NCBI GenBank assembly: GCA_053919585.1
Contig: CM132790.1
Strand: one strand, 5' to 3'
Origin: Euprymna scolopes
Lineage: Eukaryota
DNA length: 64,000 nt
The first letter of the stretch is position 1, and each line of letters opens with the position of its first letter. A program made the position numbers and the translations under genes. Positions 15,321-64,000 of the stretch are shown here, piece by piece. The notes beneath the pieces were generated by a model. The model saw nothing but the letters and a program-made list of their open reading frames with translations. It did not search any database and had not been told where the DNA came from.

Positions 15321-15329
15321 ATGGGTTAT

Positions 15330-20736: not shown

Positions 20737-20941
20737 TTGTTTCTTTGATACAAAGCTTAACAGAGGTTTTCACTTCAACGGGTTTATTAGGATTTTTAGG
20801 AACGATTGTAATTCTTAATACTGTCGCATCTGTATCAGGTGGAATGTTGACAAGTCTATTAGGTTTTACTGACACTTTAGTTGGTGTGAATGGAAGTCCT
20901 GCTGGAGTAGTTTCTACTCCAGGTACACCTGTAGTGGTTGC
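20737..20941 (-). CDS. Module exon 2 (205 nt), divergent fifth copy: ATTTGVPG...TVLRITIVPKNPNKPVEVKTSVKLCIKET
   Basis: tttcatAG acceptor and GTGAG donor, phase 0-1. Same length as and homologous to 39772-39976. Confidence 0.9.
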
Positions 20942-21390
20942 CTATGAAAATACAGAAATGACAAATAATATAAACAAATTCCAAATCTAATGATTAATAC
21001 AACTCAGGTAAACACATCTATTACATTTTATGAGCCAAAAATACAACAGAAAAAGCGTAGTATTATAAATATATATATATATATTACCCATTTTACAAAT
21101 GGAATTATTCTTATCACAGTTAGTGTTTAAAAAACAAATATAATCATTAAAATTTTGTTTGCAGTTTAAATCTTGAAACATGCAGAACAACACATTTTCA
21201 TTAATAAACATATGTTAGAGCATTCTCTGGAGACAAAATAAAATCTATTGCATAAAAATGCATCTAACAAAATGGAATAATATACAATAGTAAATACCTG
21301 AAGTAACAATTTTAACAGAAAGAAGAAATATTTTGTTTACATGTTTGATATTAAAAAAAAAAAAAAACAAACAAATAAACTTGGTAGTTG

Positions 21391-21742
21391 AGGACTGTGT
21401 TATCGTCGGAATTTTCCTGGCAATTAACATAAAACGCCGGAGAGTGCCGAACGGATGGCCAATTTTTAAAAATGAAAAATGTATTATTTCTGACATTACG
21501 TATCAATGAAATATTAATTGAAAAATGAAAGCAATATTCTTTTTGTTGTTACGAAAAAACACAATACATAATTATTAGACAATTTTTTTATGAAAATTTA
21601 AGAAAATTCCAATTCAAATTAAACAAAAAACTATCATTGTAAGGTAAGTTTAATGAATAAACATTTATTTTTTGAATAACAAACAGCAGAGAACAAACAG
21701 ATTTATTTTTTTTAATAGGAATTTTTTGTTCAGATGAAGATA

Positions 21743-21810
<68 letters not shown>

Positions 21811-21957
21811 CCGATGAGAGAAAATAAGTATTTGCTTAAATGACGTTGGCTGTTGCGATTTCATTGCCTCAGCCTTTTTACACCTTTCGACACCTTTCAG
21901 AATCTTTTCGGCGTTTTATGTAGACTGCTCAGAAAAATCTGACGATAGCATGGCCCT
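21391..21957. mobile_element. Old MITE with ~65-bp imperfect TIRs
   Basis: ggactgtgttatcgtcggaattttcctggcaattaacataaaacgccg matches the reverse complement of cggcgttttatgtagactgctcagaaaaatctgacgatagcatggccc. Confidence 0.6.
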
Positions 21958-23901
21958 TGTTCTGCATAAGTATCAAAAACTTATATAATTTATTTATTTT
22001 AGTTTTACGGTGGACAGAAATGCAATCGTGTTCACATGTATGTCGTAACTATAATAACTATATTGTCATAATGACAATGATTCATACACATTTTGTGTTT
22101 TGTTTTTGTGGCAGTAGAGTGGAGGGGTGTTGCGGATATTACAAAGCAAGACTATTATAATTACATATACCTTTTATGAGACATTGATTAAAGAAGTTAT
22201 TCTTTCAAGTCAAAATCTATTGAATGCGATGCTTTCCTTAAGGTAAGGGTGAAACAACCACTTTATATTAGGTGCTAATTTGAGAATTTTATTTCTTAAC
22301 TGATAACTCTTGACTGATAAGCCATTAAGCAGTGAAGGATGATAATGGGAGTGTAAAGTTGTACATCTATTTTTGAACGGTGTCGTTATATGTTAACGGA
22401 CCCAACACGTTGTAGACTCTGTCGTGAGGAAACAGAAGAAAGGATAAACTCGAAGCACTTTCTTTTTTTTTTTTTTTTTTTTTTTCTTTACAAAAACCTT
22501 TATATCTAGCGTTTCCACCAACGCATTTTTTTCTAAATATTTAAACAGTTCATTTCTCCTTTTCCGGTGCGTATGACTTTTCGTCCCTACTCTGACGCCA
22601 TCCACGTCTCGAATCCCTCTTCTCTGAATACTTATGTCTCGAACAAATCCTTTTCTGTTTTCCTACGCCTCGAACACGTCTCAAATCCTCTACGTCTCAA
22701 ATACGTGCTTCTCTGAACGTGCGTCCTTTTTATCTCTGTTGTGACGTCACATTGCGCAGGAGGCTTGGTCATTTGCATATGGCTGCTACCGCTAACGCAG
22801 TGTTAGCGGCTTTGTTACAAAATGTCTGCCTTTTTTGCGCCACGTGGGGGCTTGGCTGTCCTCTGATTCACCAGCTGTTTTACAGGCACTGTAGTAGTCA
22901 GCCAGGGAAAAGGAGAAGGCTGACGGTTGGTTGGTTGTTTGGGGATTGAAGTCCTTTGTATTTCTTTCGTGCACATTTTCAAATCAGTTCCAGAAGATTG
23001 TTCTTGTAGATAGGATAGGTTTGGGGCTCAGTTTGTAGGTCTACTCGATTCGTCAACGTATTTTACTCTCTCCTTAAAGTAACCCCCCCAAGAAAAGCTT
23101 TAAAAGGAGATAATAAAGAAAAGAATATTAGGGCGAGTAAACCCTAATGTATTTTAAATTTACTTAAACCGGTTAACCAGAAGATTCGACCGACTAGCCT
23201 TACGAGGTCATCGGCCATTAATAGGAAATCTATTGAAAAGAATACTATGTTCAAGAAAGAAGGAAAATCAAAACGAGATAATCAAACCCGAAATGATTTA
23301 AAGAGTGAATAACCTTAATCAGAAGAGAAAAAGATGAATATTTAACGATTACAATCAGCAAAAGAATTTAGTTAGAACTGATTTACTTAAAAAAAAGTAA
23401 ATATTGGAGCGAAAAGACTGAAAAGAAAGACTTTTATAAATACATTTTATGAAAAACAGTTTTATATTAAATTTTTATTGCGTGTTCTTTATTTTCAGCC
23501 TTCAGACCAATATTGTTGGTTTTTTGCGGGGGGGGGAGTCATTAGTTTTTCGGTAGAAAAACGAAATTAAATCTCGTTTTCCTCAATTTTTGTCGTTCTG
23601 GGCGATAATTCATTCAAGAATTGTCTCTTATTTAGAAACTCCCTTTTTATGCATTTTATGTTTTCTGTGTTTATTAATTGTTACTTAACTTTGTTAACCG
23701 TCCCTTGGAAAATAAAACAACGTGTTTTATTTCTTTTTAACATAATTGGACTTAATTACTTTCTGGGTCTAGTTTGTTGTTTCTCCCTTTTTATTGCTCC
23801 TTTGTTGTTTCCCTTTTTTCATTTATTGTTACTAAAAGACAGATTTAGATGACGAAACTAAAATCTCATTACTATGTATACGAAGAGCAGTAACAATTTA
23901 C

Positions 23902-24146
23902 CTGTGCAGTTGTAAGAAACTCAACAACGTATTCTTGGACATTAGTTGCATCGACCAGCGCAATTACACCTCCATCTTTCATCAAATCTCCAACAGTAAT
24001 TGTAACCACCCTGTCGTCTTGTGTATCTGTTCTCCATCCAGAACCATTTGGTCTGATATCTCCTGGAATTCCACTTGGTTTCAGTGTAATAGAATCATCT
24101 GGCAATACTGTCTCATCGCCCATACTTTCCATTAGTTGACATGTCG
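23902..24146 (-). CDS. Module exon 1 (245 nt), divergent fifth copy: TCQLMESMGDETVLPDDSIT...GW...NVQEYVVEFLTTAQ
   Basis: tttccAG acceptor and CAG|GTAAAT donor, phase 1-0. About 70% amino-acid identity to 40219-40463 by manual count. Confidence 0.92.
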
Positions 24147-25871: not shown

Positions 25872-27001
25872 AGATGAATAAGATGATCTTAATAAACTAA
25901 CAGCCATTTCCGTTATAGAAGTCTTTGTAAATGGTGTGTAATATTTTATTGTGAATTCAATTTAATGTCTAATGTCCATTTAAAAGTTTGTTAGTTTAAT
26001 TGACATGAAATATTTTGAAAGTATTGATTGGCATTTCCTGATATAAAATTTTAAAATTCTATATGACAAGCGTATTTAAGCGTATTTTACGACTAGTAAA
26101 TAATAAATTAAAAAAAATGATAACGTTTATAAAATGAGAAGAATTAAATTTAACTATCATATATGCAGAATAACTTAGTTTAAAAAACGTTTAAGAAATA
26201 GCATAGATTAAGTGAACAGTAATTGTTACTAATAAGGTCAAATAAGCCATTTCGTCAGACAAACTTTCACAAACTAACAGATACACATGGTTCTTATATG
26301 GTAACAATAAATGACTCGGAGAAAACATTTAAACATATGTATCTTGGTGTATAACGCGCAAGCATTTACGTATATAGTGTGATTGAAAAATTGATGGCAT
26401 GACTTCAAGATAATTTTCTATGTGTAAGAGTTTCTTTGTGTGTCGGTGGCTTTATTATATAACACGCCATTATTAGCCTTATTTATTTATAGTCCGTTTC
26501 CTCCACTGCTTTTGATTTGTGCTAACGTTTATTTTTAGCGTAATCTGTTACGTTGAGATGAGAAAGGCGAACATTCGCAGGATGCCATAGGGATCCATAT
26601 GTTGTAATAATCAACAATAAGAGACTTCTGTCGACTGTGACAATCAGATCTTTCTGTGGGGTACAATGTTTTTATATTTTTGCATAAATACGTCTGATAA
26701 AGTACTGTGAAATAAAAATAAATATGTGTTACAGAAATGTCATGGACTTCGGTGGAAATAGATTGTCATGAAACAGCACAGTTGAAGGTGTATAAGAACT
26801 TGCCTAATAACAATTATAATATATAAATAATTATAAAACGAACGAAAAAATTCAAAAGATGAGTGAAAGCAACTATCATTGTACTATAAATATAAGCTTA
26901 TTGTTTCAGGCCAGAACAAGTAACAACAAAGTTATAACATGATGAATAAATGTTGGAACATAAACGAATAAATACACAAATATATGTAAATAGATATAAA
27001 C

Positions 27002-30000
27002 ATGGTGCTAGTATTGTAACTACAGGAGCTTCCTTTGGGATACCTGGATATTGTGTTGTTGCACCAGGAGCTCGTGTTCGGAGAGCTGGAGGTTGTGTTG
27101 CTGAATCAGGACCAATCGTAGGGATGCCTACACGTTGTGTTGCTAATGATGGAGCTGGTGTTGGGATAGCTGAAGGTTGTTTTGTTGCACTATGAACTGG
27201 TGTTGCACTAGGAGCTTGGGTTGGGACACTTTGAGGCTGTGTTGTTGAACCAGGACCTGGGGTTGGAATACCTGGATGTGGTGTTGCTACTACAGGAGGT
27301 GGTGTTGAAACATCTAGAGGTTGTGTTGTAATAGCAGTAGCTGATGTTGCGATACCTGGATGTTGTATTGTAGGACCAGGAGCTAATGTTGGGAAAGCTG
27401 AAGATTGTGTTGTTGCACCAATAGCTAGTGTCGAAATACCTGGAGATTGTCTTGTTACACCAGAAACAGGTGTTGAGATAACTGGGAGTTGTATTATTGC
27501 ATCAGAAGCTCGTGTTGGGATAGCTGGAGGTTGTGTTGTTGCACCAGAAGCTGGTGTTGGCATATGTGGAGGTTGCGTTGTGACTCCAGATGCTGGAGTT
27601 GTTACAACTGTATGTTCAGTTGATGCACCAGAACTTAGCATTGATCTATCAGGAGTTGATTTTGTTATACCAGTAGTTGGTGTTAGGGTACTTGGAAGTT
27701 GTGTTGTTGCACCATTAACTGAAATTCGGATATCTGGAGTTTGTGCTGTTGCACAAGGAGTTTGTGCTGGGACACCTGGAGTTGTTACACCAAGATTTGG
27801 TGTTGGGATAAATAGAGATTTTGTTTTTGAAACAAGAGCTGGGGTGGAGATATATGGAGGTATTATTGTTGCACCAGAAGTTGGTGTTAAAATACTTGGA
27901 GGTTGTGTTGTTGTCCGATAAGATAGTATTGGGACACCTGCAAGTTGCGACTTTGCACTAGGAGCTTGTGTTGGCATACTTGGAAGTTGTGTTTTTGCAC
28001 CAAGTCCTGGTGTTGGGACACCTGCAGGTTGTAGTTTAGCTCTAGGGGCTGGGGTTGGGACACTTGGAGTATGAATTGATACACCAGAAACTGATGTTGA
28101 GATAACTGGAGGTTGTATTATTGCATACGAAGCTGATGTTGTGATAGCTGGAGGTTGTGTTATTGTATCAGAAGCTGGTGTTGGGATAGCTGGAGGTTGT
28201 ATTATTGTATCAGAAGCTGGTGTTGGGATAGCTGGAGGTTGTATTATTGTATCAGAAGCTGGTGTTGGGATAGCTGGAGGTTGTATTATTTTATCAGACG
28301 CTGGTGTTGGGATAGCTGGAGGTTGTATTATTATATCAGAAGCTGGTGTTGGGATAGCTGGATGTTGCATTATTTTATCAGACGCTGGTGTTGGGATAGC
28401 TGGAGGTTGTATTATTTTATCAGACGCTGGTGTTGGGATAGCTGGAGGTTGTATTATTTTATCAGACGCTGGTGTTGGGATAGCTGGAGGTTGTATTATT
28501 GTATCAGAAGCTGGTGTTTGGATAGCTGGAGGTTGTATTATTTTATCAGACGCTGGTGTTGGGATAGCTGGAGGTTGTATTATTTTATCAGACCCTGGTG
28601 TTGTGATAGCTGGAGGTTGTATTATTGTATCAGAAGCTGGTGTTTGGATAGCTGGAGGTTGTATTATTGTATCAGAATCTGGTGTTGGGATAGCTGGAGG
28701 TTGTATTATTGTATCAGAAGCTGGTGTTGGGATAGCTGGAGGTTGTATTATTGTATCAGAAGCTGGTGTTGGGATAGCTGGAGGTTGTATTATTATATCA
28801 GAAGCTGGTGTTGGGATAGCTGGAGGTTGTATTATTTTATCAGAAGCTGGTGTTGGGATAGCTGGAGGTTGTATTATTTTATCAGAAGCTGGTGTTGGGA
28901 TAGCTGGAGGTTGTATTATTATATCAGAAGCTGGTGTTGGGATAGCTGGAGGTTGTATTATCTTATCAGAAGCTGGTGTTGGGATAGCTGGAGGTTGTAT
29001 TATTGTATCAGAAGCTGGTGTTTGGATAGCTGGAGGTTGTATTATTTTATCAGATGCTGGTGTTGGGATAGCTGGAGGTTGTATTATTGTATCAGAAGCT
29101 GGTGTTTGGATACCTGGAGGTTGTATTATTGTATCAGAAGCTGGTGTTTGGATAGCTGGAGGTTGTATTATTTTATCAGATGCTGGTGTTGGGATAGCTG
29201 GAGGTTGTATTATTGTATCAGAAGCTGGTGTTGGGATAGCTGGAGGTTGTATTATTGTATCAGAATCTGGTGTTGGGATAGCTGGAGGTTGTATTATTGT
29301 ATCAGAATCTGGTGTTGGGATAGCTGGAGGTTGTATTATTGTATCAGAATCTGGTGTTGGGATAGCTGGAGATTGTATTATTGTATCAGAAGCTGGTGTT
29401 GGGATAGCTGGAGGTTGTGTTATTGTATCAGAAGCTGGTGTTGGGATAGCTGGAGGTTGTGTTATTGTATCAGAAGCTGGTGTTGGGATAGCTGGAGGTT
29501 GTATTATTTTATCAGAATCAGGTGTTGGGATAGCTGGAGGTTGTATTATTGTATCAGAATCTGGTGTTGGGATAGCTGGAGATTGTATTATTGTATCAGA
29601 AGCTGGTGTTGGGATAGCTGGAGGTTGTATTATTTTATCAGACGCTGGTGTTGGGATAGCTGGAGGTTGTATTATTTTATCAGACGCTGGTGTTGGGATA
29701 GCTGGAGGTTGTATTATTGTATCAGAAACTTGTGTTGGGATAGCTGGAGGTTGTATTATTGTATCAGAAGCTGGTGTTGGGATAGCTGGAGGTTGTATTA
29801 TCTTATCATACACTGGTGTTGTGATAGCTGGAGGTTGTATTATTGTATCAGAAGCTGGTGTTGGGATAGCTGGAGGTTGTATTATTGTATCAGAAGCTGG
29901 TGTTGGGATAGCTGGAGGTTGTATTATTGTATCAGAAGCTGGTGTTGGGATAGCTGGAGGTTGTATTATTGTATCAGAAGCTGGTGTTGGGATAGCTGGA

Positions 30001-33000
30001 GGTTGTATTATTGTATCAGAAGCTGGTGTTGGGATAGCTGGAGGTTGTATTATTGTATCAGAATCTGGTGTTTGGATAGCTGGAGGTTGTATTATTGTAT
30101 CAGAAGCTGGTGTTGGGATAGCTGGAGGTTGTATTATTGTATCAGAATCTGGTGTTGGGATAGCTGGAGGTTGTATTATTGTATCAGAAGCTGGTGTTGG
30201 GATAGCTGGAGGTTGTATTATTGTATCAGAAGCTGGTGTTGGGATAGTCTGAGATTGTATTTTTGTATCAGAAGCTGGTGTTGGAGCATGTGGATGTTGC
30301 ATTGTGACTCTAGAAACTGGACTTGAGACAGCTGTACATTCAGTTGATGTACCAGAACCTGGCATTATACTCCCAGGAGTTGGTTTTCTTACAAGAGTAG
30401 GTGGGATTGAGACACCTGGAAGTTGTGTTGGTTCATCGGAAGCTGGCATTTGCATACTTTGTGGAAATGTTGTTGCATAGAGAACTGGAGTTGGGATAAG
30501 TGAAAGTTGAGTTGTTGCACCTGGAGTTGTTAGCACATCTGAGATCTGTTTTGTTGCCTGACGTGCATGTGTTGGAACAGCTGGAGGTTGTGTTGTTGCA
30601 CCAGGAGCTAGTGTTGGGACTCGTGGAGGTTGCGTTGTAACTTTGGAAGCTGGAGTTGAGACAGATGTACATTCAGTTGGTGCACGAGAACCTGGCATTA
30701 GCTTAGCAGGAGTTAGTTTTCTTACACTAGTAGTTGGTGTTGGGACACCTGGAGGTTGTGTTGTTTCATCGGAAGCTGGCCTATGCATACTCGATGGATG
30801 TGTTGTTGTATGGAGAGCTAGGGTTGGGATAGGTGGAAGTTGAGTTGTTGCACCTGGAAGTAGCGTTGGCACACCTAGAATCTGTTTTGTTGCATGAGGT
30901 GCATGTGTTGGGACACCTGGAGATTGTGTTTTTGTACCAGGAGCTAGGTTTAGAACACCTGGAGGTCGTGTCATTGCACCAGGTGCAGGTGTTGGCACAC
31001 CTGGAGGTAGTTTTGTTAAACCACGAACTAGGCTAGGGGCACTTAGAGCTTGTGTTGTTGCACTAATAGCTGATGTTGGCATATCAGGAGGTTGTACTAT
31101 TGAACCAGGAACTGGTGTTGGGATATCTGGAAGTTGTTTTGTTGCAGGAGTAATTGATGTTGGGATACCAAGAGATTGTGTTATAACAGCAGTAGTTGAG
31201 GCTGGGAAACCTGGTGGTTGTGATGTTACATCTGAAGCTTGGCTTAATACACCTTGATGTTGTTTTGTGGCACTAGGAGCTGACGTTGGGATTAATGGAG
31301 GTTGTGTTTTTGAAGCAGAATTTAGGATTTTAACACCTAGAGGTTTTGTTGTAGCACAAGAAACTGATGTGGGGATAATTGTGAGTTGTGTTGTTGAACT
31401 AGAAGCTGGTATTGGCACGTCTGAAGATTGTGTTTTAACACCAGGTGCTTGTGTTGGGACACCTGGAGATTGTACTTTTAGTCTATGAACTTGAGTTGGG
31501 ACAACTGATAGTTCAATTGTTACACTGGAAGTTAGTGTTTGCATATCTGAAGGCTGTGTAGTTGCATGGGGAATTAAGGTTGAGACAGTTAGAGGTTGAG
31601 TTATTGCACCTGGAGCTGGTGTTGGCACACCTGGAAGTGTTGGTGTTAGCATATCTGGAGGTTTTTTTATTGAACCAAGAGCCAGGGTTCTGACCCGTGG
31701 AGTTTGTGTTGCTGAAGTAGGAGCTGGTGTTGAAATATGTATAGGTTGTCTTATATGAGAAACTAGTGGTGGGACATCTGGAGGTTGTGGTTTTGAATTA
31801 GGAGCTGGGGTTGTGACACCTAGAACTTCTGTTGTTGCACTATGAGCTGATGTTGTCATACCTGGAGGTTGTGCTGTTGAACCAGGAGCTGGTGTTAGGA
31901 TACCAAGAGCTTGTGTTGTTACACCAGCAGCTAGTGTTGGGAAACCTGGTGATTGTACTGTTACACCTGGAGCTTGGATTAGGACACCTCGATGTTGTGT
32001 TGTTGCCTTAGGAGCTGGGGTTGGGACCCATAGAGGTTGTGTTTTTGAAGCAGGAGCTAGAGTTTTGACACCTAGAGATAGTGTTGTTGCACAAGAAACT
32101 GATGTTAGGATACTTGGAATGTGTGCTGTTGCACCAGAAGTTGGTCTTATGATACCTGAAGTTTGTATTGTTGCTGGTGTTGGTGCTCCTACAGGTTGTA
32201 TTGTTGCAACAGGAGCTGGTGTTGGCACACCTGAAAGCTGTGTTTTTACATTAGGTGCTCGTGTTGAGACACCTGGGGGTTGTGTTGAGACACCTGGGGG
32301 TTGTGTTCTTACTCTAGGAACTGGCGTTTGCATACCCGGAAGTTGTGTTGTTGCATGGAAGACTATGGTTGGGAGAGATGCAGGTTGAAGTGTTGCACTT
32401 AGAGTTGATGTTGACTCATCTGAAAGTTGTTTTAGTGCATTAGGAGTGTGTGTTGGGTCAGCTTGAGGGTGTGTTGTTGAACCAGGAGCTGGACTTGGGA
32501 CACCCAGGGGTAAAGTTATTACACCAGGTGTTGGTCTTTGCACACCTTGAGCCTGTGTTGTTGCACCAAGAGCTAATGTTGGCATACCTGGAAGTTGTAC
32601 TGTTGAACAGGGAGCAGTTGTTGGGATACCTGAACGTTGTTTTGTTGCAATAGAAACTTTAGTTGGCATACCAAGAGCTTGTATTGTTATATTGACAGCT
32701 GGGGTTGGGAAACCTGGTGGTTGTGCTGTTACACCTGGAGCTTGAGTTAATACACCTTGATGTTGTGTTGTTGCACTAGGAGATGGTGTTGGGACCCATG
32801 GAGATTGTGTTTTTAAAACAGGAGCTGAGGTTTTGACACCTAGAAGTTGTGTTGTAGCACAGGAAACTGATGTTGGGATACTTGGAGGTTGTGTTATTGA
32901 AGCAGAAGCTGGTGTCAAAACACCTGGAGGTTGTGTTTTTTCACCAAGAGCTGGTGTTGGGACACCTGGAGGTTGTTCTCTTGCATTAGGAGCTGATGTT

Positions 33001-33364
33001 TGGATACCTGGATATTCTGTTGTTACACTATATGCTTGGGTTGGGATAGCTGAATGCTTTGTTAGTCTAGGAGCTGGTGTTGGGATATCTTTAGGTTTTG
33101 TTGTTGCACTAGAAGCTGATGTTGGGATAACTGAAAGTCGTGTTGTTGCATGAGGAGCTGGGATTGGAGCACCTGGAGCTTGTGTTGGTGCTCCAGGAGC
33201 TGGGGTTGGGACACCTGGATGCTGAGTTTTTGCATCAAGTACTGGTATTGGAATACCTGAAGGTTGTGTTGTTTGTTGAGGAGCTGTTGTTGGGACACCT
33301 GCAGGCGGCGTTGTTGTCTTTGTTAGGGCTGGTGTAGTTAAACCTGATACTTGTGCTGTTACAG
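27002..33364 (-). CDS. Giant Pro/Thr-rich mucin exon (6,363 nt, 2,121 codons)
   Basis: Core of the 2163-aa ORF. Acceptor atttttcAG|CT GTA ACA. Donor is either CCAT|GTTTAT at 27000-27001 (weak) or CCAG|GTATCC 42 nt earlier (exon end 27044); both are phase 1. Confidence 0.9.
28130..30290 (-). repeat. 42-bp coding minisatellite, ~51 copies of PPAIPTPASDTIIQ
   Basis: Plus-strand unit gaagctggtgttgggatagctggaggttgtattattgtatca repeated in tandem without visible indels. Confidence 0.97.
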
Positions 33365-35226
33365 CTGAAAAATATTTTATTTCAATCATATTAATAGTTA
33401 ATCTGATTAGAAATGTGATGATAAAGTACTAGTATTAAAAGAAACTATTATTAAAACTGTATTTGTGTCTTGAATTGTACATTTTCTAGGATAGTGTGTA
33501 GATTGTGAACTGCCTCATTTCTAAATCAAATAAATGTATATCAATTGATAATTGTTGATTTTAATTTACTGATATATTTTGTGCTTTAAATTCTTGTTTG
33601 ATAGCGATCAAGTGATTCAGATGATAACATATTTATGTATAAGATGTGATTTGTATTCATGCAACCAACACATTTTAGACACTCACTCTACTAAGTTATT
33701 GTAAAATATTTCAATCCATTCTGCAGATTAGTAAAATTACTAGATAAATAGGCATCCTAAGACAGGTAAAATTCATTTTCCAAACAGAACCATTTTTCCC
33801 TGCCTTGATGTTTCCTCACAAAGATTAAAATCAATGTATTATGACAATAAACCTTATGTATAGAATCCTTATTCCAATTTTGGTCAAACTCAATTAAAGA
33901 ATTGAAATGTTTCAAAATGTCTAGAACTTATTGCTTAAGCTTAAGGTGTCTTTAAGAAGAAATTGAACCCAGAGAATCTTGCTTGATTGGTGTCTTATGA
34001 CCATGGATAAAATTTCATGAAATTCTTAAATATATGAATATTCAAATCACAGGTTATTTCCATCGGTGTCTGCTAAACTCTTTTAACATACTCCAAATAA
34101 ACTGAAAGTTGGGGAATATTGTGTACCAGGAGAAACCTTCACATGCTTTCCCACAGTGACTTAGTCCAAAATATATTGTAGGCTACATTGCATTGTAGAG
34201 AACCTACTGTTTATTTTATAAAATTATTTTTATATATAACGTCTTGAATTAAAGTTTAAAATGCAAAAGTCAAGTATCATGGTTCAATGTGCTCTTAACA
34301 CAAACATTGATTTGAATGCGCCACTGTCATACCAAAGAATCTACTGTTAATTTTATAATGGAAGTTTAAAATAAAAATGTCAAGTATCATTGTTCAATTG
34401 TGCATTAAGAAGAAACATTCATTGCGAACGTGCTTCTGTCATATCAAAGAACCTACTATTGACTTTATATGTTGGGTGTTTCTGTTTGTGTGCTAATAAA
34501 ACTTCTCAATTGCCCTTGTGTTGTTAGGCTGTATAAAATGTTAACTTTGGTCAAAATCGCCTGTTCTTTTTTTCCATTGGATTTTTTTCGATTATCGATA
34601 CTTATTGAAGACATTCAGATGTAAAATGTATCTAAGAACACTGCCGAATACATAAAGTGAATTTGTGTGAAATTTCATAAAAATCGATCCAGACACAGAT
34701 AAAGTTGATTTTATATAATAGTAGAGAAACATATATTTTATATATGTGACAATATTCAAGTAAATTAATTTTTGTTATATAAAATGCTTCTTTAATAATT
34801 ACTAACGGTATCTTTATGGTGTTGTCCGAGATTTAGTTGCATTATTTTAACTTTTAGTTTGTTTGCAAATATCTAAATTGGAAGTAAACAGATTCTATTT
34901 AATTTTTCAATTTTAGAAAATACTTTTTCCGTTTCTTAATTCATATTTGCTGTTGATAAGCTAACATTTTATATAATCATTCGTATGGACTGTATAAGTA
35001 AGTTTTCAAATAGCTATGTACGTTATTTTATTGCTCGGGACATGAAAAACAATAAGCATGAAAATTATCAATGAAAAGGTAAGTCAACATTTGCTTCATA
35101 AATTATAGTCGAGTCTGACTTTAAAAATCCGACAATGCAACTTTATATGTTGGATAAACCCAGAATGATTAAATTGAATTATCATATCTGCAAAAATCAT
35201 TTGAATGGGAAATTAACATGGTTAAC

Positions 35227-37291: not shown

Positions 37292-38628
37292 TTTTTTTAT
37301 ACTGCTTTTTCACCCTAAACGAGGCACAATACCACTTGGGCCTAACGGGCTACTATGTAGGATCAAATTTGCAAGGATACTAAATAGGGAGTTGAGCAGC
37401 AGAATGTCTGTTCATATTACATTTGAACTTCTGCATGTCATTACAGTCAGGATAGCAGGAACTCGAGAGGAAATTTCAAAATATAACCGTTTGGGAAAAT
37501 AAATTATTTGAGTAGAAGGCTTTTAAGCATCTAGGAATGTTTATAGTTTAAGAGTGGGATTTTTCTGCTTGTTGGGTTAGTCAAGAGTATTTACATCGAT
37601 TGCTAAATATGCTTGCAGTTTGCCAGAGCATTTTCTATTAAAATACTTGTAAAATAGGCACATGGAGGCAATATTGAGGCAGTGGGACAGAGGTTAGAAT
37701 TTGGTTGACAGTGCAGGACCTATTAGGTTGGCGACTCTATTTTGAACCCTGTATAGGAGTGAGAAAATAGTAGCAGATTAACTATCCCAGATGTGACAAC
37801 AATACTCCATGCATAAGCGAATGGTGGCCTTGTAGAAGTACAGGATACTCTCGGACATGAGTAATTTTCTAGCATGATAGAGAGAGCTCATCTTCTTCCC
37901 AGCAGCTTGGCAATGCCCTCAATATATGTGCTCTAATTCATGTTCCCTGTGAACATTTAACCAAGGAATTTGAATGAAAAGATTTCAGGTAGCGCATCAT
38001 TAGTCATGGCTATAAGTGGCTGAAAAGATTTCTTGTAATTATTAAAGGAAATAAGCTTAGTCTTAGCAGCATTGAATGTTACCATCCATTTATGACTTTG
38101 GTCCACCACAGACTGGATGGCTTCCTCTTAAGTTTCAGCCATTTCCTTAGATATGTGTACATTTGTTTTCCCGTCATGTCTGTTACAGAGCATGGTGTCA
38201 TCAGCAAATATGGAAATCTCAGAGAAATATGGCATCCCTGTGCCTGTTTTACAAGTACTTTAATGGAAAGTGTTCAGACAGACTCAAATTACTGGGTCTC
38301 CTCAGCATAAATGCCTGCGACAAACCCAACTGGAAATTCAACTTATAAATAGTGCAACAAACAGCAAAATCCCACCCCCACATTATAAAGATTCCTAGAT
38401 GCCGGAACGCCTTCTACTCAAATAGCTGCTTTCAAACTGCTAGACTTATTTCCCTCCCAGGCCCCTGCTTCCCTGGCTCTATTGATATGTAGAAGTTCAA
38501 GTGTAATGTGAATAGACATTTTGCTACCCAACTCCCTACACTGTGTCCGTGCAAATTTCGTCCCAAATAGTAGCCCCTTACGTCTTAGTGGTACTGTGCA
38601 TATTTGGGGTGAAAAATCAGATAAAAAA
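37292..38628. mobile_element. Two CR1-clade LINE fragments joined head-to-head (minus ~37292-38225, plus ~38225-38628)
   Basis: Minus part has the RT motif ISIFADDT (intact in the copy ORF 61538..61816). Plus part reads ASLCLFYKYFNGKCS..KIPRCR. Both end in the same tail tagtagccc...gggtgaaaaa. Confidence 0.82.
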
Positions 38629-39771: not shown

Positions 39772-39976
39772 TTGTTTCTTTGATACAAAGTTTAACAGAA
39801 GTTTTCACTTCAACAGGAAACTGAGGATTTCTAGGAATAATTGTAATTCTCAGTACTGTTTCATCTGTACCAGCTGGAATGTTGACAGGTTTGTTATAAT
39901 TTGCTGTGACCTTAGTTGGTGTAGGTATTAATCTTGCTGGAGTAGTTTCTGCCAGAGGTACACCTGTAGTCACTTT
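39772..39976 (-). CDS. Module exon 2 (205 nt), cassette copy 1
   Basis: ttctacAG acceptor and GTGAG donor, phase 0-1. Reads KVTTGVPLAETTP...VLRITIIPRNPQFPVEVKTSVKLCIKET. Confidence 0.92.
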
Positions 39977-40218
39977 CTGTAGAAAACACAGTAATAATGT
40001 ACAATTATAAGAAGTCAATATAAAATATAAAGTAAAACACAGGTGACGATGTAAAATAGCGTTTACTTTCGGTTTCAATCAGCCAAGTGAAATACACGTT
40101 TGACGTGACATTGAGTAAACTAAAAAACAATAAGGTAACAGAATTTTTCATGCCATACTTGCGTTAAACTAAGAACGTAATAAATGTGCTATGTACGTTA
40201 GGAGATGTAAAAATTTAC

Positions 40219-40463
40219 CTGTGTAGTTGTCAGAAATTCAACAAGGTATTTTTGAACATTATCTGTATCGATAAGCTGAATTACACCGCCACCTGTCATC
40301 GAATCTCCAACCGTGATTGTGACCACTCTGTCTTGTTGTGTATATGTTAACCATCCAGGACCACTTGGTCTGATGTCTCCGGGATTTCCACTCGGTTCCA
40401 ATGTAATAGCACTATCAGGCAATACAACATCATCATCCATCCCTTCCAAAAGTGTACACGTCA
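40219..40463 (-). CDS. Module exon 1 (245 nt), cassette copy 1
   Basis: ttcctcatAG acceptor and CAG|GTAAAT donor, phase 1-0. Reads TCTLLEGMDDDVVLPDSAIT...GPGW...NVQKYLVEFLTTTQ. Confidence 0.92.
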
Positions 40464-41361
40464 CTATGAGGAAAGAGTTAAGCAAAAATTAAAATCGTCA
40501 AAAGCTGGTAGTTTTGTCAATTTGTCTGTTGAGAATTTTGACTTGGAACATGCACATTGAGAAAAATAGATAAGAGAAACTTGAAAAAATGCCGTATAAG
40601 CTGTGAGAATATATTTGATTATATCAACAAGTATATACTTTTGATTTAATTTAGTGAACTTATAACAAACGGAAAAAACTTTTCTAAAATTGCAAAGTTA
40701 GGTCCTTTTAGACTTTATGAAAATAACATATATTTGTGCTTTAGTGGCCAACACAGATAAATTATGAGCTAAAAAAAGAAATAGATGTTTATGCCTAGAA
40801 AATAGAGATGTATGTGTGCAGAAATATATTATTTAAAATATATATATATGGTTGTTGTGTGGTTGTATTACGTTTGGTATATTCAAAAAAAAAATATATT
40901 GAAATGTAAATTATATTAGTTTAATATATACATGGTTTATCAATAAACACAGTTTGAAGTGTAAAGTTATTGCTCTCAGGAATTTCATTAGTATCTTTAT
41001 ATTACCCTCAAATATAAAAATCTGCTGTGATATATGCTAGGGTATATTTAAGAAAATTTCAATATAATAATATTTAAATATTCATCTAATTTAGTGTTCA
41101 ATTTTTGTAAGATAAACATAGTTATTTCCAGTTCTACATAGCAACAAGCATATTCTTTTGATTTAATTTAGTGAAATTATTAAAAAAATGAAGATTAATT
41201 TCTAAAATTGCAAAGTTAGATCCTTTTAGAGTTTATGAAAGTAACATATACTTTTGCATCAGTGGCAAAAACAGGTAAATTATAGGCTAAAAACGAAATA
41301 GATGTTTATGCATATAAACAGAGAGACATGTGTGTAGAGACATAGGGATTGAAATATATAC

Positions 41362-41487
41362 CTGGAGGTTGTGTTGTTACCGTAGGAGATGGTGGTGGAA
41401 CACCTGCAGTTGTCGTTGTGGCACCTGGTGCTGGTGTTGACCTTGCTGGTACTGATGTAGTTACACCTGGTCCTGGTGTTGATATAG
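41362..41487 (-). CDS. 126-nt PTS mini-exon (3 x 42 bp)
   Basis: ttttcAG|CT...CCAG|GTATAT, phase 1-1. Reads ISTPGPGVTTSVPARSTPAPGATTTTAGVPPPSPTVTTQPP. Confidence 0.88.
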
Positions 41488-42324
41488 CTGAAAAATATTT
41501 TTATATTAAGCATATTAACAGTGATTCTTATTAGAAAAGTCAATTGACGGCTTACGCAGAAGTCATCTTAACAAGAAATTGAAACTCAGAGAAACTTGTA
41601 ATTCGTGTCTCATGACTAAAAAAGAATTCAAATGCAGGTGTAGAATACATCAATTTACAAATTGAAGGCTGAGCTACTTGTGTCTGTATACTGTCTTAAA
41701 ATACTCCTAAATAAAATGAAATTTTTCAAACATTTATTATTGATGTCTAATTCTTATTGTTAAAATCTGACAAAAATCACAGATATCCACATTTAAACAA
41801 TGACATCCTTGCCTTTTTTTTCTTTTTTTTTTTGCTTTACACAAAATTCGATTGAACTAACGGTTAAATTCATTGCAGAAACTTATGACTTGCAAATTTT
41901 TTCAAATTATATAATGATTAATTTCTTAATAACGATTCATGGAAAATGCACAAATTTACACAGATGTATGCATATGTAAATATTAATATCTATGCATATG
42001 AGAATCCATGAGATTTTTGAAATTCAACTTATAAATAGCGCAAAGGTATTTAGTTTGGTATATTCAAAAAATATAAATATAACACTGAAATGTAACTTAA
42101 TGAGTTTAATATATACATGGTTTATCAATATACACAGTTTGAAGTGTAAAGTAATTGCTCTTGGGAATTTCATTAGTATCTTTATATTACCCTCAAATAA
42201 AAAAATCTGCTGTGGTATATGCTAGGGAATATTGAAGAAAATTTACAAAATAATTACATTTAAATATTCATCTAATTTAGTGTTCAATTTTTGTAAGATA
42301 AACATAGTTATTTGAAATATATAC

Positions 42325-42492
42325 CTGGTGGTTGTGTGGTTGCACCAGGAGGTGGCGTTGTGAAAACTGGAAGTTTTATTGTTGACATAGGAGTTGGCAT
42401 TGGGATACCTCCAGATGTCGTTGTTGCACCTGGTGCTGGTGTTGACCTTGCTGGTACTGATGTAGTTACACCTGGTCCTTGTGTTGATATAG
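42325..42492 (-). CDS. 168-nt PTS mini-exon (4 x 42 bp)
   Basis: tttgcAG acceptor and CCAG|GTATAT donor, phase 1-1, open frame. Confidence 0.88.
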
Positions 42493-44513
42493 CTGCAAAA
42501 TATTTTTATATTAAGCATATTAACAGTGATTCTTATTAGAAAAGTCAATTGACGGCTTATGCTGAAGTCATCTTAACAAGAAATTGAACCTTAGAGAAAC
42601 TTGTAATTAGTGTCTCATGACTAAAAAAGAAATCAAATGCAGGTGTAGAATATATGAATTTACAAAGTGAAGGTATAGTTACATGTATCTGTATACTTTC
42701 TTAAAATACTCCTAAATAAAATTAAATTTGGCAAACATTTATTATTGATGTCTAATCATTATTGTTAAATCTGAAAAAAACTGAAATTTGGAAAATATTT
42801 ATTATTGATGTCTAATCCTTATTATTAAAATCTGACAAAAATCACAGATATCTACATTTAAACAATAACATCCTTGCATTTCTTTTTTGCTTTACATACA
42901 ATTCGATTGGACTAACGGTTAAATTCATTACAGAAACTTATGCCTTGCAACTTGTTTCATATTATATAATGATTAATTTCTTAATAACGATTCATGGAAA
43001 ATGCACAAATGTACACAGATGTAAGCATATGTAAATATCAATATCTATGCATATGAGAATCCATGAGATTTTGGAAATTCAACTTATAAATAGTGCAACA
43101 AACAGCAAAATCCCACCCCCACATTATAAAGACTCCTAGATGCCGGAACGCCTTCTACTCAAATAGCTGCTTTCAAACTGCTAGACTTATTTCCCTCCCA
43201 GGCCCCTGCTTCCCTGGCTCTATTGATATGTAGAAGTTCAAGTGTAATGTGAATAGATATTTTGCTACCCAACTCCCTACACTGTGTCCGTGCAAATTTC
43301 GTCCCAAATAGTAGCCCCTTACGTCTTAGTGGTACTGTGCATATTTGGGGTGAAAAATCAGATAAAAAAGGTTAGTTTCACATAGTGCTAAGATACCTGG
43401 GAAATTTGCTAGGAGAAATGATTCTACATAGTTTAAGTTTAAATAATTTCAACTGTTACCCTGAAAAAATACTGAATCAATATGCACAGTTAAATGTTTT
43501 AGGTTATTGCTTTCATAAAACTAATTAGTATTTTGTACCATCTTCAAATATAATAAAAGTGAAGTGATTATATGCAAGAGAATGTTGGAGCAAACTTCAG
43601 AAATAATTAAATTTTAATATTTGTAAAAATTTGCGTTTAATTTAAAAAAAAAGTTAATGTAGTAATATTCATTCTGACGTGACAGATTTGTTTTGACAAT
43701 TAGGAATTTACATTGAAACTGAAGAAATAATGCACACTTGCATCGTTGACTTATTGTGTCAAAATAATAAAGAGTCATATAGGTAGGGACTCTTGCATGC
43801 CACACATTTTAAAGCCTTTTACCTGTATTTTTTGTTCAAAAGGAGACACAAAAAATCCAGGCAGTGCTGTTTTAATCTCAAAATGTAAGCGACTCCAGTT
43901 GACGGAGAGTGATAGTTCTGGGCCAGATAGTGGTTAGAAATTTCAAATGGGAAAATCAGGATTTGAAAGAAAAATATTTCAATCACTTGGGCTTAAATAT
44001 GATACTCCGTTCTCTCCCTCCCTCTTTATATCTTTCTCTATCTCGGTCGTGTTTTGCCTAAAAGTGAAGAATTGTAAATTAGTTAGCGTTTAGATGCACC
44101 TCGTGATGGTGTGGTCACTAGCTAAGCACAAAGTTCGAGCTCAGAGTAAATAATCGTTCTTACATGCTTAAAAATTTTTCTAAATATATAAGAAAATGTA
44201 TGTTGCTCATTTTATATAGCATTTGATGACAGAAGATTTGGCATTCCAGAAATAACGAAAACAGAGACCTCAGAAAAATCCCAACAAAACGCAGGTGGCA
44301 TAATGTAAATGATTTTGATTAAAGATGATGTGCCTATCAACTTTAAGTAATAAATGTAGGGAGCTGGGCGTAACATCAGTAGAAATATCAAGAACATACC
44401 AAGCTTACCCTCCAGCAGCAAACTATCGGGTTATATTGGGCTGATAATACTCTGCATTTTAAATCCAACACAATGAGGGATTTGTGTTTAATAAAGGAAA
44501 CGTTATTACTCAC

Positions 44514-44718
44514 TTGTTTCTTTGATACAAAGTTTAACAGAAGTTTTCACTTCAACAGGAAACTGAGGATTTCTAGGAATAATTGTAATTCTCAGTACTG
44601 TTTCATCTGTACCAGCTGGAATGTTGACAGGTTTGTTATAATTTGCTGTGACCTTAGTTGGTGTAGGTATTAATCTTGCTGGAGTAGTTTCTGCCAGAGG
44701 TACACCTGTAGTCACTTT
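44514..44718 (-). CDS. Module exon 2, cassette copy 2
   Basis: Same boundaries and 205-nt length as copy 1. Confidence 0.9.
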
Positions 44719-44960
44719 CTGTAGAAAACACAGTAATAATGTACAATTATAAGAAGTCAATATAAAATATAAAGTAAAACACAGGTGACGATGTAAAATA
44801 GCGTTTACTTTCGGTTTCAATCAGCCAAGTGAAATACACGTTTGACGTGACATTGAGTAAACTAAAAAACAATAGGGTAACAGAATTTTTCATGCCATAC
44901 TTGCGTTAAACTAAGAACGTAATAAATGTGCTATGTACGTTAGGAGATGTAAAAATTTAC

Positions 44961-45205
44961 CTGTGTAGTTGTCAGAAATTCAACAAGGTATTTTTGAACA
45001 TTATCTGTATCGATAAGCTGAATTACACCGCCACCTGTCATCGAATCTCCAACCGTGATTGTGACCACTCTGTCTTGTTGTGTATATGTTAACCATCCAG
45101 GACCACTTGGTCTGATGTCTCCGGGATTTCCACTCGGTTCCAATGTAATAGCACTATCAGGCAATACAATATCATCATCCATCCCTTCCAAAAGTGTACA
45201 CGTCA
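44961..45205 (-). CDS. Module exon 1, cassette copy 2
   Basis: Same boundaries and 245-nt length; one V>I difference from copy 1. Confidence 0.9.
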
Positions 45206-46106
45206 CTATGAGGAAAGAGTTAAGCAAAAATTAAAATCGTCAAAAGCTGGTAGTTTTGTCAATTTGTCTGTTGAGAATTTGGACTTGGAACATGCACATT
45301 GAGAAAAATAGATAAGAGAAACTTGAAAAATGCCGTATAAGCTGTGAGAATATATTTGATTATATCAACAAGTATATACTTTTGATTTAATTTAGTGAAC
45401 TTATTACAAACTGAAAAATTTTTCTAAAATTGCAAAGTTAGGTCCTTTTAGACTTTATGAAAATAACATATATTTGTGCTTTAGTGGCCAACACAGATAA
45501 ATTATGAGCTAAAAAAAGAAATAGATGTTTATGCCTAGAAAATAGAGATGTATGTGTGCAGAAATATATTATTCAAAATATATATATGGTGGTTGTGCGG
45601 TTGTATTAAGTTTGGTATATTCAAAAAAATAAAAATATAATATTGAAATGTAAATTATATGAGTTTAATATATACATGGTTTATCAATATACACAGTTTG
45701 AAGTGAAAAGTTATTGCTCTCAGGAATTTCATTAGTATCTTTATATTACCCTCAAATATAAAAATCTGCTGTGATATATGCTAGGGTATATTTAAGAAAA
45801 TTTCAAAATAATTACATTTAAATATTCATCTAATTTAGTGTTCAATTTTTGTAAGATAAACATAGTTATTTCCAGTTCTACATAGCAACTAGCATATTCT
45901 TTTGATTTAATTTAGTGAAATTATTAATAAAAATGAAGATTAATTTCTAAAATTGCAAATTTAGATCCTTTTAGAGTTTATGAAAGTGACATATACTTTA
46001 GCATCAGTGGCAAAAACAGATAAATTATAGGCTAAAAACGAAATAGATGTTTATGCATATAAACAGAGAGACATGTGTGTAGAGACATAGGAATTGGAAT
46101 ATATAC

Positions 46107-52716: not shown

Positions 52717-52921
52717 TTGTTTCTTTGATACAAAGTTTAACAGAAGTTTTCACTACAACAGGAAACTGAGGATTTCTAGGAATAATTGTAATTCTCAGTA
52801 CTGTTTCATCTGTACCAGCTGGAATGTTGACAGGTTTGTTATAATTTGCTGTGACCTTAGTTGGTGTAGGTATTAATCTTGCTGGAGTAGTTTCTGCCAG
52901 AGGTACACCTGTAGTCACTTT
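52717..52921 (-). CDS. Module exon 2, cassette copy 3
   Basis: 205 nt with AG/GT boundaries; E>V difference (PVVVKT). Confidence 0.9.
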
Positions 52922-53163
52922 CTGTAGAAAACACAGTAATAATGTACAATTATAAGAAGTCAATATAAAATATAAAGTAAAACACAGGTGACGATGTAAA
53001 ATAGCGTTTACTTTCGGTTTCAATCAGCCAAGTGAAATACACGTTTGACGTGACATTGAGTAAACTAAAAAACAATAAGGTAACAGAATTTTTCATGCCA
53101 TACTTGCGTTAAACTAAGAACGTAATAAATGTGCTATGTACGTTAGGAGATGTAAAAATTTAC

Positions 53164-53408
53164 CTGTGTAGTTGTCAGAAATTCAACAAGGTATTTTTGA
53201 ACATTATCTGTATCGATAAGCTGAATTACACCGCCACCTGTCATCGAATCTCCAACCGTGATTGTGACCACTCTGTCTTGTTGTGTATATGTTAACCATC
53301 CAGTACCACTTGGTCTGATGTCTCCGGGATTTCCACTCGGTTCCAATGTAATAGCACTATCAGGCAATACAATATCATCATCCATCCCTTCCAAAAGTGT
53401 ACACGTCA
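53164..53408 (-). CDS. Module exon 1, cassette copy 3
   Basis: 245 nt with AG/GT boundaries; SGTGW variant. Confidence 0.9.
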
Positions 53409-63326: not shown

Positions 63327-63531
63327 TTGTTTCTTTGATACAAAGTTTAACAGAAGTTTTCACTTCAACAGGAAACTGAGGATTTCTAGGAATAATTGTA
63401 ATTCTCAGTACTGTTTCATCTGTACCAGCTGGAATGTTGACAGGTTTGTTATAATTTGCTGTGACCTTAGTTGGTGTAGGTATTAATCTTGCTGGAGTAG
63501 TTTCTGCCAGAGGTACACCTGTAGTCACTTT
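63327..63531 (-). CDS. Module exon 2, cassette copy 4
   Basis: 205 nt with AG/GT boundaries. Confidence 0.9.
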
Positions 63532-63773
63532 CTGTAGAAAACACAGTAATAATGTACAATTATAAGAAGTCAATATAAAATATAAAGTAAAACACAGGTG
63601 ACGATGTAAAATAGCGTTTACTTTCGGTTTCAATCAGCCAAGTGAAATACACGTTTGACGTGACATTGAGTAAACTAAAAAACAATAGGGTAACAGAATT
63701 TTTCATGCCATACTTGCGTTAAACTAAGAACGTAATAAATGTGCTATGTACGTTAGGAGATGTAAAAATTTAC

Positions 63774-64000
63774 CTGTGTAGTTGTCAGAAATTCAACAAG
63801 GTATTTTTGAACATTATCTGTATCGATAAGCTGAATTACACCGCCACCTGTCATCGAATCTCCAACCGTGATTGTGACCACTCTGTCTTGTTGTGTATAT
63901 GTTAACCATCCAGTACCACTTGGTCTGATGTCTCCGGGATTTCCACTCGGTTCCAATGTAATAGCACTATCAGGCAATACAATATCATCATCCATCCCTT
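63774..64000 (-). CDS. Module exon 1, cassette copy 4 (5' end beyond the window)
   Basis: CAG|GTAAAT donor. Reads EGMDDDIVLPDSAIT...EFLTTTQ. Confidence 0.9.

What the first reader, a model, noticed from the sequence alone, without database searches (positions are those of the whole stretch)
39772..40463. The repeated ~150-aa module looks like a highly divergent discoidin/FA58C domain
Spliced module: TCTLLEGMDDDVVLPDSAITLEPSGNPGDIRPSGPGWLTYTQQDRVVTITVGDSMTGGGVIQLIDTDNVQKYLVEFLTTTQ|KVTTGVPLAETTPARLIPTPTKVTANYNKPVNIPAGTDETVLRITIIPRNPQFPVEVKTSVKLCIKET. It has exactly two Cys, one at each end. The motif order C..GM..hPD..IT / R..GW / V..Y.V.F / hRI.h.P / terminal strand-C parallels the FA58C consensus (C..LGM..IPD.QIT..RL..W..V..Y.V.YS..RIRI.P..LR.EL.GC), which is closed by an N-to-C disulfide. 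The WLQVDL and TQG signatures are missing, so Pfam may not detect it. FA58C domains are known in insect hemolectin and SCO-spondin and bind glycans or lipids. A cross-linking or lectin role here is inference.
Basis: inference. Interest (0 to 1): 0.8.

Follow-up and report, generated by a model that had tools for sequence, protein, structure and literature searches.

The report
Hidden discoidin-type beads in octopus-like mucin
The repeated 150-residue unit is a real, transcribed protein domain with the fold of the discoidin (clotting factor V/VIII C-type) domain; sequence searches miss it, and it is strung between sugar-carrying linkers in a giant mucus-like protein of a mollusc.

Summary
On the minus strand, 40463-40219 and 39976-39772 are two exons with canonical splice sites. 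Together they encode one 150-codon, phase 1-1 module with exactly two Cys, one near each end. PolyA RNA contigs show the exon A-exon B joint and the joints to flanking 126/168-nt Pro/Thr/Ser mini-exons. The window holds five copies: four are 97-100% identical and one is 69-73% identical.

I could not pass the spliced window sequence by reference, so I folded its Octopus bimaculoides homologue (37% identity, full length, E 3e-29) with a 62-row family alignment. The model has pLDDT 87.7 and pTM 0.82. An unbiased PDB-wide structural search returns only galactose-binding-domain-like folds, led by neuropilin b1/b2, factor VIII C1/C2, DDR1/2 and discoidin I (Z 11-12). A longer family member gives Z 13-14.5, and all top 50 matches are discoidin domains. 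By alignment ranges, the two Cys fall on the canonical N-to-C disulfide.

Sequence methods fail: Pfam, PDB profile searches and hhalign find nothing. It is therefore a Pfam-invisible discoidin subfamily, found in about 28 clusters, of which the named ones are octopus and chiton. A binding or cross-linking role is inference. The scan noted the same module type at other loci of this genome.

The parts
40219..40463 (-). Module copy 4, exon A (245 nt; N-terminal Cys, GM..PD..IT, DIRP.G.GW, NV..Y.VEF)
   Evidence: Canonical AG/GT sites; homologous joint seen in RNA contigs; exon-level homologues in 20+ database clusters
39977..40218 (-). 242-nt phase-0 intron inside the domain, at the start of the Thr/Pro-rich loop
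   Evidence: GT..AG; 'skips 242' joint in RNA contigs on the paralogous copy
39772..39976 (-). Module copy 4, exon B (205 nt; Thr/Pro-rich loop, last three strands, C-terminal Cys)
   Evidence: Logan homologue P0043 at 84% identity
44514..45205 (-). Module copy 3 (exon A 45205-44961, exon B 44718-44514)
   Evidence: tblastn 99-100%; RNA contigs of 530 and 537 nt span PTS-exonA-exonB-PTS
52717..53408 (-). Module copy 2 (exon A 53408-53164, exon B 52921-52717)
63327..64000 (-). Module copy 1 (exon B 63531-63327; exon A 64000-63774, cut by the window edge)
20737..24146 (-). Diverged module copy 5 (exon A 24146-23902, exon B 20941-20737, about 3-kb intron)
   Evidence: 69% / 73% identity, canonical splice sites, dN/dS 0.57 against copy 4
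41362..42492 (-). Two Pro/Thr/Ser linker mini-exons (42492-42325, 168 nt; 41487-41362, 126 nt), phase 1-1. Equivalents lie at 47512-47345, 46232-46107, 58129-57962, 56914-56789, 55705-55538 and 54428-54303
   Evidence: blastn copies, splice sites, RNA joints
26901..33428 (-). Open frame of 2176 aa: giant Pro/Thr/Ser/Ala-rich exon made of 42-nt repeats, between module copies 4 and 5
   Evidence: T+S+P 45%
1..5250 (-). Second giant Thr-rich open frame (1750+ aa, 18-nt and 252-nt repeats), running off the window
   Evidence: Thr 34%

Best explanation
The module is a strongly diverged discoidin-type (F5/8 type C-like, galactose-binding-domain-like) beta-sandwich of about 145 residues. It is very probably closed by a disulfide between its first and last strands. 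Its middle part is replaced by a short Thr/Pro-rich, probably flexible and O-glycosylated loop, which begins exactly at the internal intron. It is encoded by two exons bounded by phase-1 introns. It is repeated as a folded 'bead' between Pro/Thr/Ser linker exons in a giant, transcribed, mucin-like gene of a mollusc, probably a cephalopod.

Shown: the exon structure, transcription, repetition, family membership and fold. Inferred: the beads act as ligand-binding or self-associating nodes (glycan, lipid or protein ligands bound by the loops at one end of the barrel, as in other discoidin domains). In that reading they tie the extended glycosylated chains into a network, much as CysD domains do in vertebrate gel-forming mucins or the discoidin domains of echinoderm adhesive proteins. 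The confidence given (0.75) is for the identity of the domain and the gene architecture; the binding or cross-linking role alone I would put at about 0.35.
For: Gene structure and transcription.

Family: a profile search of 1.84 billion representatives gives 38 hits. About 28 are real, including Octopus bimaculoides XP_052821907 and XP_052834281 and the chiton Liolophura sinensis 'mucin-2-like', which has 7 modules between PTS stretches.

Fold: the AF2 model of the octopus module has pLDDT 87.7 and pTM 0.82. Foldseek against PDB puts the DDR2 DS domain, FVIII C2 and neuropilin b1 on top, with probability 1.0. VIA-align gives Z 11-12. A PDB-wide search independent of Foldseek gives only GBD-like folds, with neuropilin on top. 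The second model, of a longer family member, has pLDDT 87.4 and Z 13.2-14.5, and all 50 top entries are discoidin domains at 14-19% identity.

Disulfide: Cys at model residues 4 and 140 lie within the range 4..143, which aligns to FVIII C2 2173..2329 and NRP1 b1 274..427. The C-terminal Cys is invariant in the 30 full-length family modules, and the N-terminal Cys is the consensus residue at its column.

Independent support: the nearest named clusters by protein-language-model features carry PF00754.

Context: relatives combine the module with TIL, VWC and a bona fide PF00754 domain. AFDB look-alikes are CTCK-domain and 'mucin-5AC-like' proteins. The window module is 37% identical to the modelled homologue over its full length, E 3e-29.
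Against: No sequence-based method links the module to FA58C. Pfam finds nothing for the exons, for whole homologues or for any of 62 family members at E<=10. Profile searches of PDB sequences find nothing relevant. hhalign against the one genuine FA58C domain available gives probability 6% and 0.6%.

For the octopus model, DOC and IFT25 domains score almost as high (Z 11) as discoidin domains. The window's own spliced sequence was not folded.

dN/dS of 0.57 between the two copy types shows only moderate constraint. Nothing tests ligand binding. The ends of the gene (signal peptide, VWD, CTCK) lie outside the window.
Confidence: 0.75

Rival explanations
1. The module has the general galactose-binding-domain-like jelly-roll fold but is not a descendant of the FA58C/discoidin family. 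It could be closer to DOC/APC10-, CBM- or PITH-like domains, or have converged on the fold.
For: All sequence and profile comparisons with FA58C fail. In the unbiased search with the octopus model, HERC2 DOC and IFT25 reach Z 11.0 against 12.1 for neuropilin.
Against: The longer family member gives discoidin domains only in its top 50, at Z 13.2-14.5. Identity to discoidin domains is 14-19%, against 8-11% for DOC, IFT25 and CBM. The terminal Cys pair, the extracellular mucin/VWC/TIL/CTCK context and the phase 1-1 exons fit animal FA58C domains, not the cytosolic DOC/IFT25 domains.
Confidence: 0.12
2. The fold call is right but the beads bind nothing. They are inert, disulfide-stabilised, protease-resistant spacers or folding units that break up the glycosylated chain.
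For: The family's most conserved motifs (DIRP.G.GW, GNV) correspond to core, not loop, positions of the fold (correspondence is inference). dN/dS is 0.57 between copy types. The canonical middle part of the domain is replaced by a Thr/Pro loop.
Against: Discoidin domains studied so far are binding modules. For example, sea urchin Nectin and sea star Sfp1 carry discoidin domains; the Nectin domains are described as binding galactose and GlcNAc residues, and a cohesive role is proposed for Sfp1 (PMC7037938). The domain has been kept across octopus, chiton and unnamed metatranscriptome organisms.
Confidence: 0.3
3. The discoidin-like model is an artefact of a shallow alignment, and the real fold is different (Ig-like, CUB, SEA or novel).
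For: The alignment has only 62 rows, many of them partial, with Neff about 4. The ESM Atlas model of the whole octopus protein is poor, pTM 0.42.
Against: Two separately predicted members, about 20% identical to each other, give the same fold with pLDDT 87-88 and pTM 0.82-0.83. All five AF2 models of each are alike in confidence. No Ig, CUB or SEA fold appears among 48,161 chains compared.
Confidence: 0.04

Closest known systems
F5/8 type C (discoidin, FA58C; Pfam PF00754) domains of neuropilin b1/b2, coagulation factors V/VIII C1/C2, DDR1/2, lactadherin, retinoschisin and Dictyostelium discoidin I/II
   Same: Same beta-sandwich fold (Z 11-14.5, 124-138 residues aligned, rmsd 2.5-3.5 A). Similar size. 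A Cys at each end in the position of the closing disulfide. Extracellular, multi-domain context.
   Different: No detectable sequence-profile match. The WLQVDL and TQG signatures are absent in the window's copy; chiton and metatranscriptome relatives keep weaker forms, Y-I-Q-L-D-L and G-N-V. The segment after the Y.V.F strand is replaced by a Thr/Pro-rich loop of low model confidence. The domains are repeated many times between mucin-type linkers.
CysD domains of vertebrate gel-forming mucins (MUC2, MUC5AC, MUC5B)
   Same: Small folded, disulfide-containing domains that interrupt long O-glycosylated PTS regions. They are thought to give non-covalent cross-links (established knowledge, not tested here).
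   Different: Unrelated fold and sequence. CysD has about 10 Cys, whereas this module has two. This is an analogy of role only.
Multi-discoidin adhesive and cohesive proteins of echinoderms (sea urchin Nectin, sea star Sfp1)
   Same: Secreted proteins with several discoidin domains. The Nectin domains are described as binding galactose and GlcNAc residues, and Sfp1 is credited with cohesion of the secreted material (PMC7037938).
   Different: Their discoidin domains are described as canonical F5/8 type C domains and are not separated by long PTS linkers. There is no evidence that the present gene is expressed in an adhesive organ.
SCO-spondin / hemolectin-hemocytin type proteins (VWD-C8-TIL, LDLa, FA58C, TSP1, CTCK)
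   Same: In O. bimaculoides the homologous gene lies, on the same strand, between products with TIL-VWD-C8-TIL-LDLa and TSP1/TIL domains. Metatranscriptome relatives combine the module with TIL, VWC and one canonical FA58C.
   Different: None of these other domains lies in this window. Whether the octopus neighbours belong to one gene is not known. Here the module is multiplied and alternates with PTS.

Membership tests
F5/8 type C (discoidin) domain | Distorted beta-barrel/jelly-roll of the galactose-binding-domain-like superfamily, about 150 residues | tested here: met
   AF2 models of two family members (pLDDT about 87.5) match discoidin domains best, at Z 11-14.5. Tested on a 37%-identical homologue, not on the window's own sequence.
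F5/8 type C (discoidin) domain | Disulfide joining a Cys at the very start to a Cys at the very end of the domain | tested here: inconclusive
   The module has exactly two Cys. The C-terminal Cys is invariant in the 30 full-length family modules and the N-terminal Cys is the consensus residue at its column. They are model residues 4 and 140, inside the aligned range 4..143 = FVIII C2 2173..2329 and NRP1 b1 274..427. Those domains' disulfide positions are from memory. The distance was not measured because no coordinates were returned.
F5/8 type C (discoidin) domain | Match to the Pfam PF00754 profile at or near its gathering score | tested here: not met
   No hit at E<=10 for the window exons, whole homologues or any of 62 family members. 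In P0039, Pfam finds a true PF00754 domain at 171-285 but not the modules.
F5/8 type C (discoidin) domain | Signature motifs (W-L-Q-V-D-L ... T-Q-G; P...L-R-x-E-L-x-G-C), recalled from memory | tested here: not met
   Absent in the window's copies (V-V-T-I-T-V ... D-T-D-N-V; K-L-C-I-K). Weak counterparts occur in relatives (Y-I-Q-L-D-L ... V-T-G-N-V).
F5/8 type C (discoidin) domain | Profile-profile similarity to a genuine FA58C domain | tested here: not met
   hhalign against P0039:150-300 gives probability 6% and 0.6%. Only a single-sequence template was available, so this is a weak test.
F5/8 type C (discoidin) domain | Ligand binding through loops ('spikes') at one end of the barrel | not testable with these tools
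   Needs coordinates and binding assays.
Mucin-like (PTS) secreted glycoprotein | Long tandem-repeated Pro/Thr/Ser regions | tested here: met
   Open frames of 2176 aa and 1750+ aa made of 42-nt and 18-nt repeats, plus 126/168-nt PTS mini-exons.
Gel-forming mucin (VWD-C8-TIL assemblies, CTCK) | N-terminal VWD assemblies and a C-terminal cystine knot for covalent polymerisation | not testable with these tools
   The gene runs off both ends of the window and none of these domains lies in it. There are leads only: the octopus neighbours, AFDB CTCK look-alikes and an unchecked scan note on another locus.
Mucin CysD domain | About 110 residues with about 10 conserved Cys | tested here: not met
   Two Cys only; different fold.

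The most novel reading that the evidence does not exclude
Molluscs, and perhaps other spiralians, build a class of giant mucus or adhesive proteins from a lineage-specific, Pfam-invisible discoidin bead. This bead would play the part that CysD domains play in vertebrate gel-forming mucins. Its internal, intron-marked loop would be a hot-spot where mucin-type sequence can be inserted inside the fold: short here, reportedly long in a paralogue 309 kb away. That would make it a protein domain designed to carry a glycosylated loop.
Probability: 0.3. Interest if true: 0.6.

Novelty: new variant of a known kind. Interest (0 to 1): 0.45.

Why it matters
It gives a fold and a testable role to a domain that annotation pipelines leave blank. 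The octopus proteins are 'uncharacterized' and the chiton protein is called 'mucin-2-like' only for its linkers. It shows that some molluscan mucin-like giants are strings of discoidin-type beads. It also points to concrete experiments on what holds cephalopod mucus or adhesive secretions together. A Pfam or InterPro model built from the family alignment would annotate these genes across molluscan genomes.

Tried and rejected
1. Fishing for a database protein that holds the window's own spliced module, so that it could be passed by reference. I searched with the 104-aa exon-B open frame and found only one 79-aa Logan fragment. I therefore did not fold the window's own sequence and did not type it in.

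2. Collecting FA58C sequences for a proper profile-profile test by searching with the genuine FA58C domain of P0039. There were no hits at E<=1e-5, so hhalign could only use a single-sequence template.

3. PDB sequence searches with two family profiles and three single modules. They gave only chance hits: ribosomal L23, flavivirus E, NS3.

4. Ten of the 38 representative hits. P0015, P0025, P0026, P0032, P0034, P0035, P0037 and P0038 are unrelated bacterial repeat proteins matched on short stretches, and I discarded them.

5. Literature searches for a described mollusc or cephalopod mucin with discoidin domains found nothing specific.

6. Reading the gene as a 'split domain with PTS inside'. 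I rejected this for this window because RNA contigs join exon A directly to exon B.

Full report
WHAT IS THERE

The finding's coordinates are exact. On the minus strand, 40463-40219 (245 nt) and 39976-39772 (205 nt) are two exons with AG acceptors and GT donors, separated by a 242-nt intron. Exon A starts with two bases of a split codon and exon B ends with one. The pair is therefore a 450-nt, 150-codon, phase 1-1 unit.

The window holds five copies. Four are nearly identical: 97-100% in protein, with introns 99.6-100% identical. One is diverged, at 24146-23902 / 20941-20737, with 69% and 73% identity and dN/dS 0.57 against copy 4.

Between the copies lie 126-nt and 168-nt Pro/Thr/Ser mini-exons and two giant Pro/Thr/Ser-rich open frames of 2176 and 1750+ residues, built of 42-nt and 18-nt repeats. 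All 17 exons examined have canonical splice sites. Fifteen consecutive exons join into a 910-residue open frame.

TRANSCRIPTION

Contigs of two polyA RNA-seq runs, 530 and 537 nt long, run from linker exon to exon A to exon B to linker exon. They give the joints 44961/44718, 44514 to 41487, 42325 to 41487 and 41362 to 45205. The domain is thus contiguous in the mRNA, and the linkers lie between domains, as beads on a string. These joints are on the neighbouring, nearly identical copy. Two raw-read runs of the same species label showed almost no reads here, so expression is tissue- or sample-specific.

FAMILY

Pfam finds nothing in either exon. I searched 1.84 billion cluster representatives with a profile of exon A and got only 38 hits. 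Ten of them are unrelated bacterial repeat proteins.

The real hits fall into three groups:
- Exon-sized open frames from uncurated assemblies. They share the exon A boundary and read on into intron.
- Two Octopus bimaculoides proteins, and a chiton (Liolophura sinensis) 'mucin-2-like' protein with seven modules between Pro/Thr/Ser stretches.
- A set of JGI metatranscriptome-type proteins. In these, two to five modules follow TIL and VWC domains at the C-terminus.

One of the JGI proteins, P0039 (4511 aa), also carries a canonical Pfam F5_F8_type_C domain directly before a weak copy of the module. Pfam sees that domain but not the modules.

The window is therefore molluscan, most likely cephalopod. 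In O. bimaculoides the homologous gene lies between same-strand products with TIL-VWD-C8-TIL-LDLa and TSP1/TIL domains, a SCO-spondin-like neighbourhood. I cannot say whether these belong to one gene.

FOLD

The spliced window module has no reference, and I did not type it. I folded the octopus module P0013:15-160 instead. It aligns with the window module over the full length at 37% identity, E 3e-29. I used a 62-row family alignment that includes the window's exons.

The model is confident: pLDDT 87.7, pTM 0.82, nine strands, and one low-confidence stretch in the Thr/Pro-rich middle. The structural searches gave:
- Foldseek against PDB puts the DDR2 discoidin domain, factor VIII C2 and neuropilin b1 on top.
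- VIA-align gives Z 11-12 over 124-131 residues.
- A PDB-wide comparison that does not depend on Foldseek finds only galactose-binding-domain-like folds. Neuropilin b1/b2 leads at Z 12.1, then discoidin I, the HERC2 DOC domain and IFT25 at Z 11, then DDR1 and factor VIII at Z 10.9. There is no Ig, CUB or SEA fold.
- A second model, of the longer metatranscriptome type (pLDDT 87.4, pTM 0.83), gives Z 13.2-14.5. All top 50 entries are discoidin domains, at 14-19% identity.
- Protein-language-model neighbours with a Pfam name carry PF00754. Atlas structures of neuropilin and factor V-like proteins match at TM 0.67-0.69.

The two Cys are model residues 4 and 140. The aligned ranges are 4..143 against FVIII C2 2173..2329 and NRP1 b1 274..427. 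This places the Cys where these domains have their N-to-C disulfide (those positions are from memory). The C-terminal Cys is invariant in the 30 full-length family modules, and the N-terminal Cys is the consensus residue at its column. I could not measure the distance.

WHAT FAILS

Every sequence-level test of FA58C membership is negative:
- Pfam on 62 members at E<=10.
- PDB sequence searches with profiles and with single modules.
- hhalign against the only true FA58C sequence I could reference: 6% and 0.6% probability, although the G-x-G-W motifs align in register.

They are plausible only in the light of the fold. Relatives keep intermediate forms of the signatures, Y-I-Q-L-D-L and V-T-G-N-V in the chiton.

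Compared with canonical domains and with the longer relatives, the cephalopod type has lost about 25 residues after the Y.V.F strand. In their place it carries a Thr/Pro-rich loop, which starts exactly at the internal phase-0 intron.

HOW IT PROBABLY WORKS

Shown: a transcribed, giant, mucin-like gene in which discoidin-type beads alternate with Pro/Thr/Ser linkers.

Inferred: the protein is secreted and heavily O-glycosylated. The beads are disulfide-closed binding or self-association nodes that tie the chains into a network. This would be analogous to mucin CysD domains and to the discoidin domains of sea urchin Nectin and sea star Sfp1. The Nectin domains are described as binding galactose and GlcNAc residues, and Sfp1 is credited with cohesion (PMC7037938). 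An inert spacer role cannot be excluded.

NOVELTY

The fold is known. The family is a diverged, unannotated subfamily found in few lineages. Earlier notes of this scan describe the same kind of module elsewhere in this genome: at the window's own far edge, 309 kb upstream with a long loop inside the fold, and on another piece with VWC and CTCK ends. I checked only the first of these myself.

Noticed in passing
window 10000-12200 (minus strand): GC-richer block (0.44) with retroelement-like open frames: a CCHC-type zinc-knuckle stretch and an aspartic-protease-like motif (A-L-V-D-T-G-C). It looks like an LTR-retrotransposon remnant inside an intron of the mucin-like gene.
   Followed up: no
window 14665-15347; also 37957-38109 and 61541-61840 (minus strand): LINE-type reverse-transcriptase fragments. 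One fragment recurs in each tandem unit, so the element was already there when the units were duplicated.
   Followed up: no
window 39772-53408: The three complete near-identical copies differ by 1-3 substitutions, all non-synonymous, while their introns are 99.6-100% identical. The cause could be very recent duplication, gene conversion or an assembly effect. The unit lengths differ (4.7, 8.2 and 10.6 kb) with the number of linker mini-exons (2, 2, 4).
   Followed up: partly
window 23621-23680 (minus strand): A weak, partial exon-A-like fragment (45% identity over 20 residues) inside the 3-kb intron of the diverged copy. It may be a decayed duplicate exon.
   Followed up: no
P0039 (JGI contig, locus L002 4001-17536), residues about 520-3500: About twenty copies of a shorter (about 115-residue) Cys-to-Cys module (C-x-K-x-M-K ... 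A-C) separated by Thr-rich linkers. It may be a reduced relative of the module studied here. Neither my profile nor Pfam recognises it.
   Followed up: no
L001 (O. bimaculoides CM046602.1, 7748395-7779607): The octopus homologue (module plus PTS exons, many assembly gaps) lies between same-strand gene models with TIL-VWD-C8-TIL-LDLa and with TSP1/TIL domains. This may be one large SCO-spondin-like gene split by the annotation.
   Followed up: partly
window 43186-43379: Very high RNA contig depth (thousands) with loose ends on both sides and a fixed T>C difference at 43231. This behaves like a highly expressed dispersed repeat in the intron, not like part of this gene.
   Followed up: no
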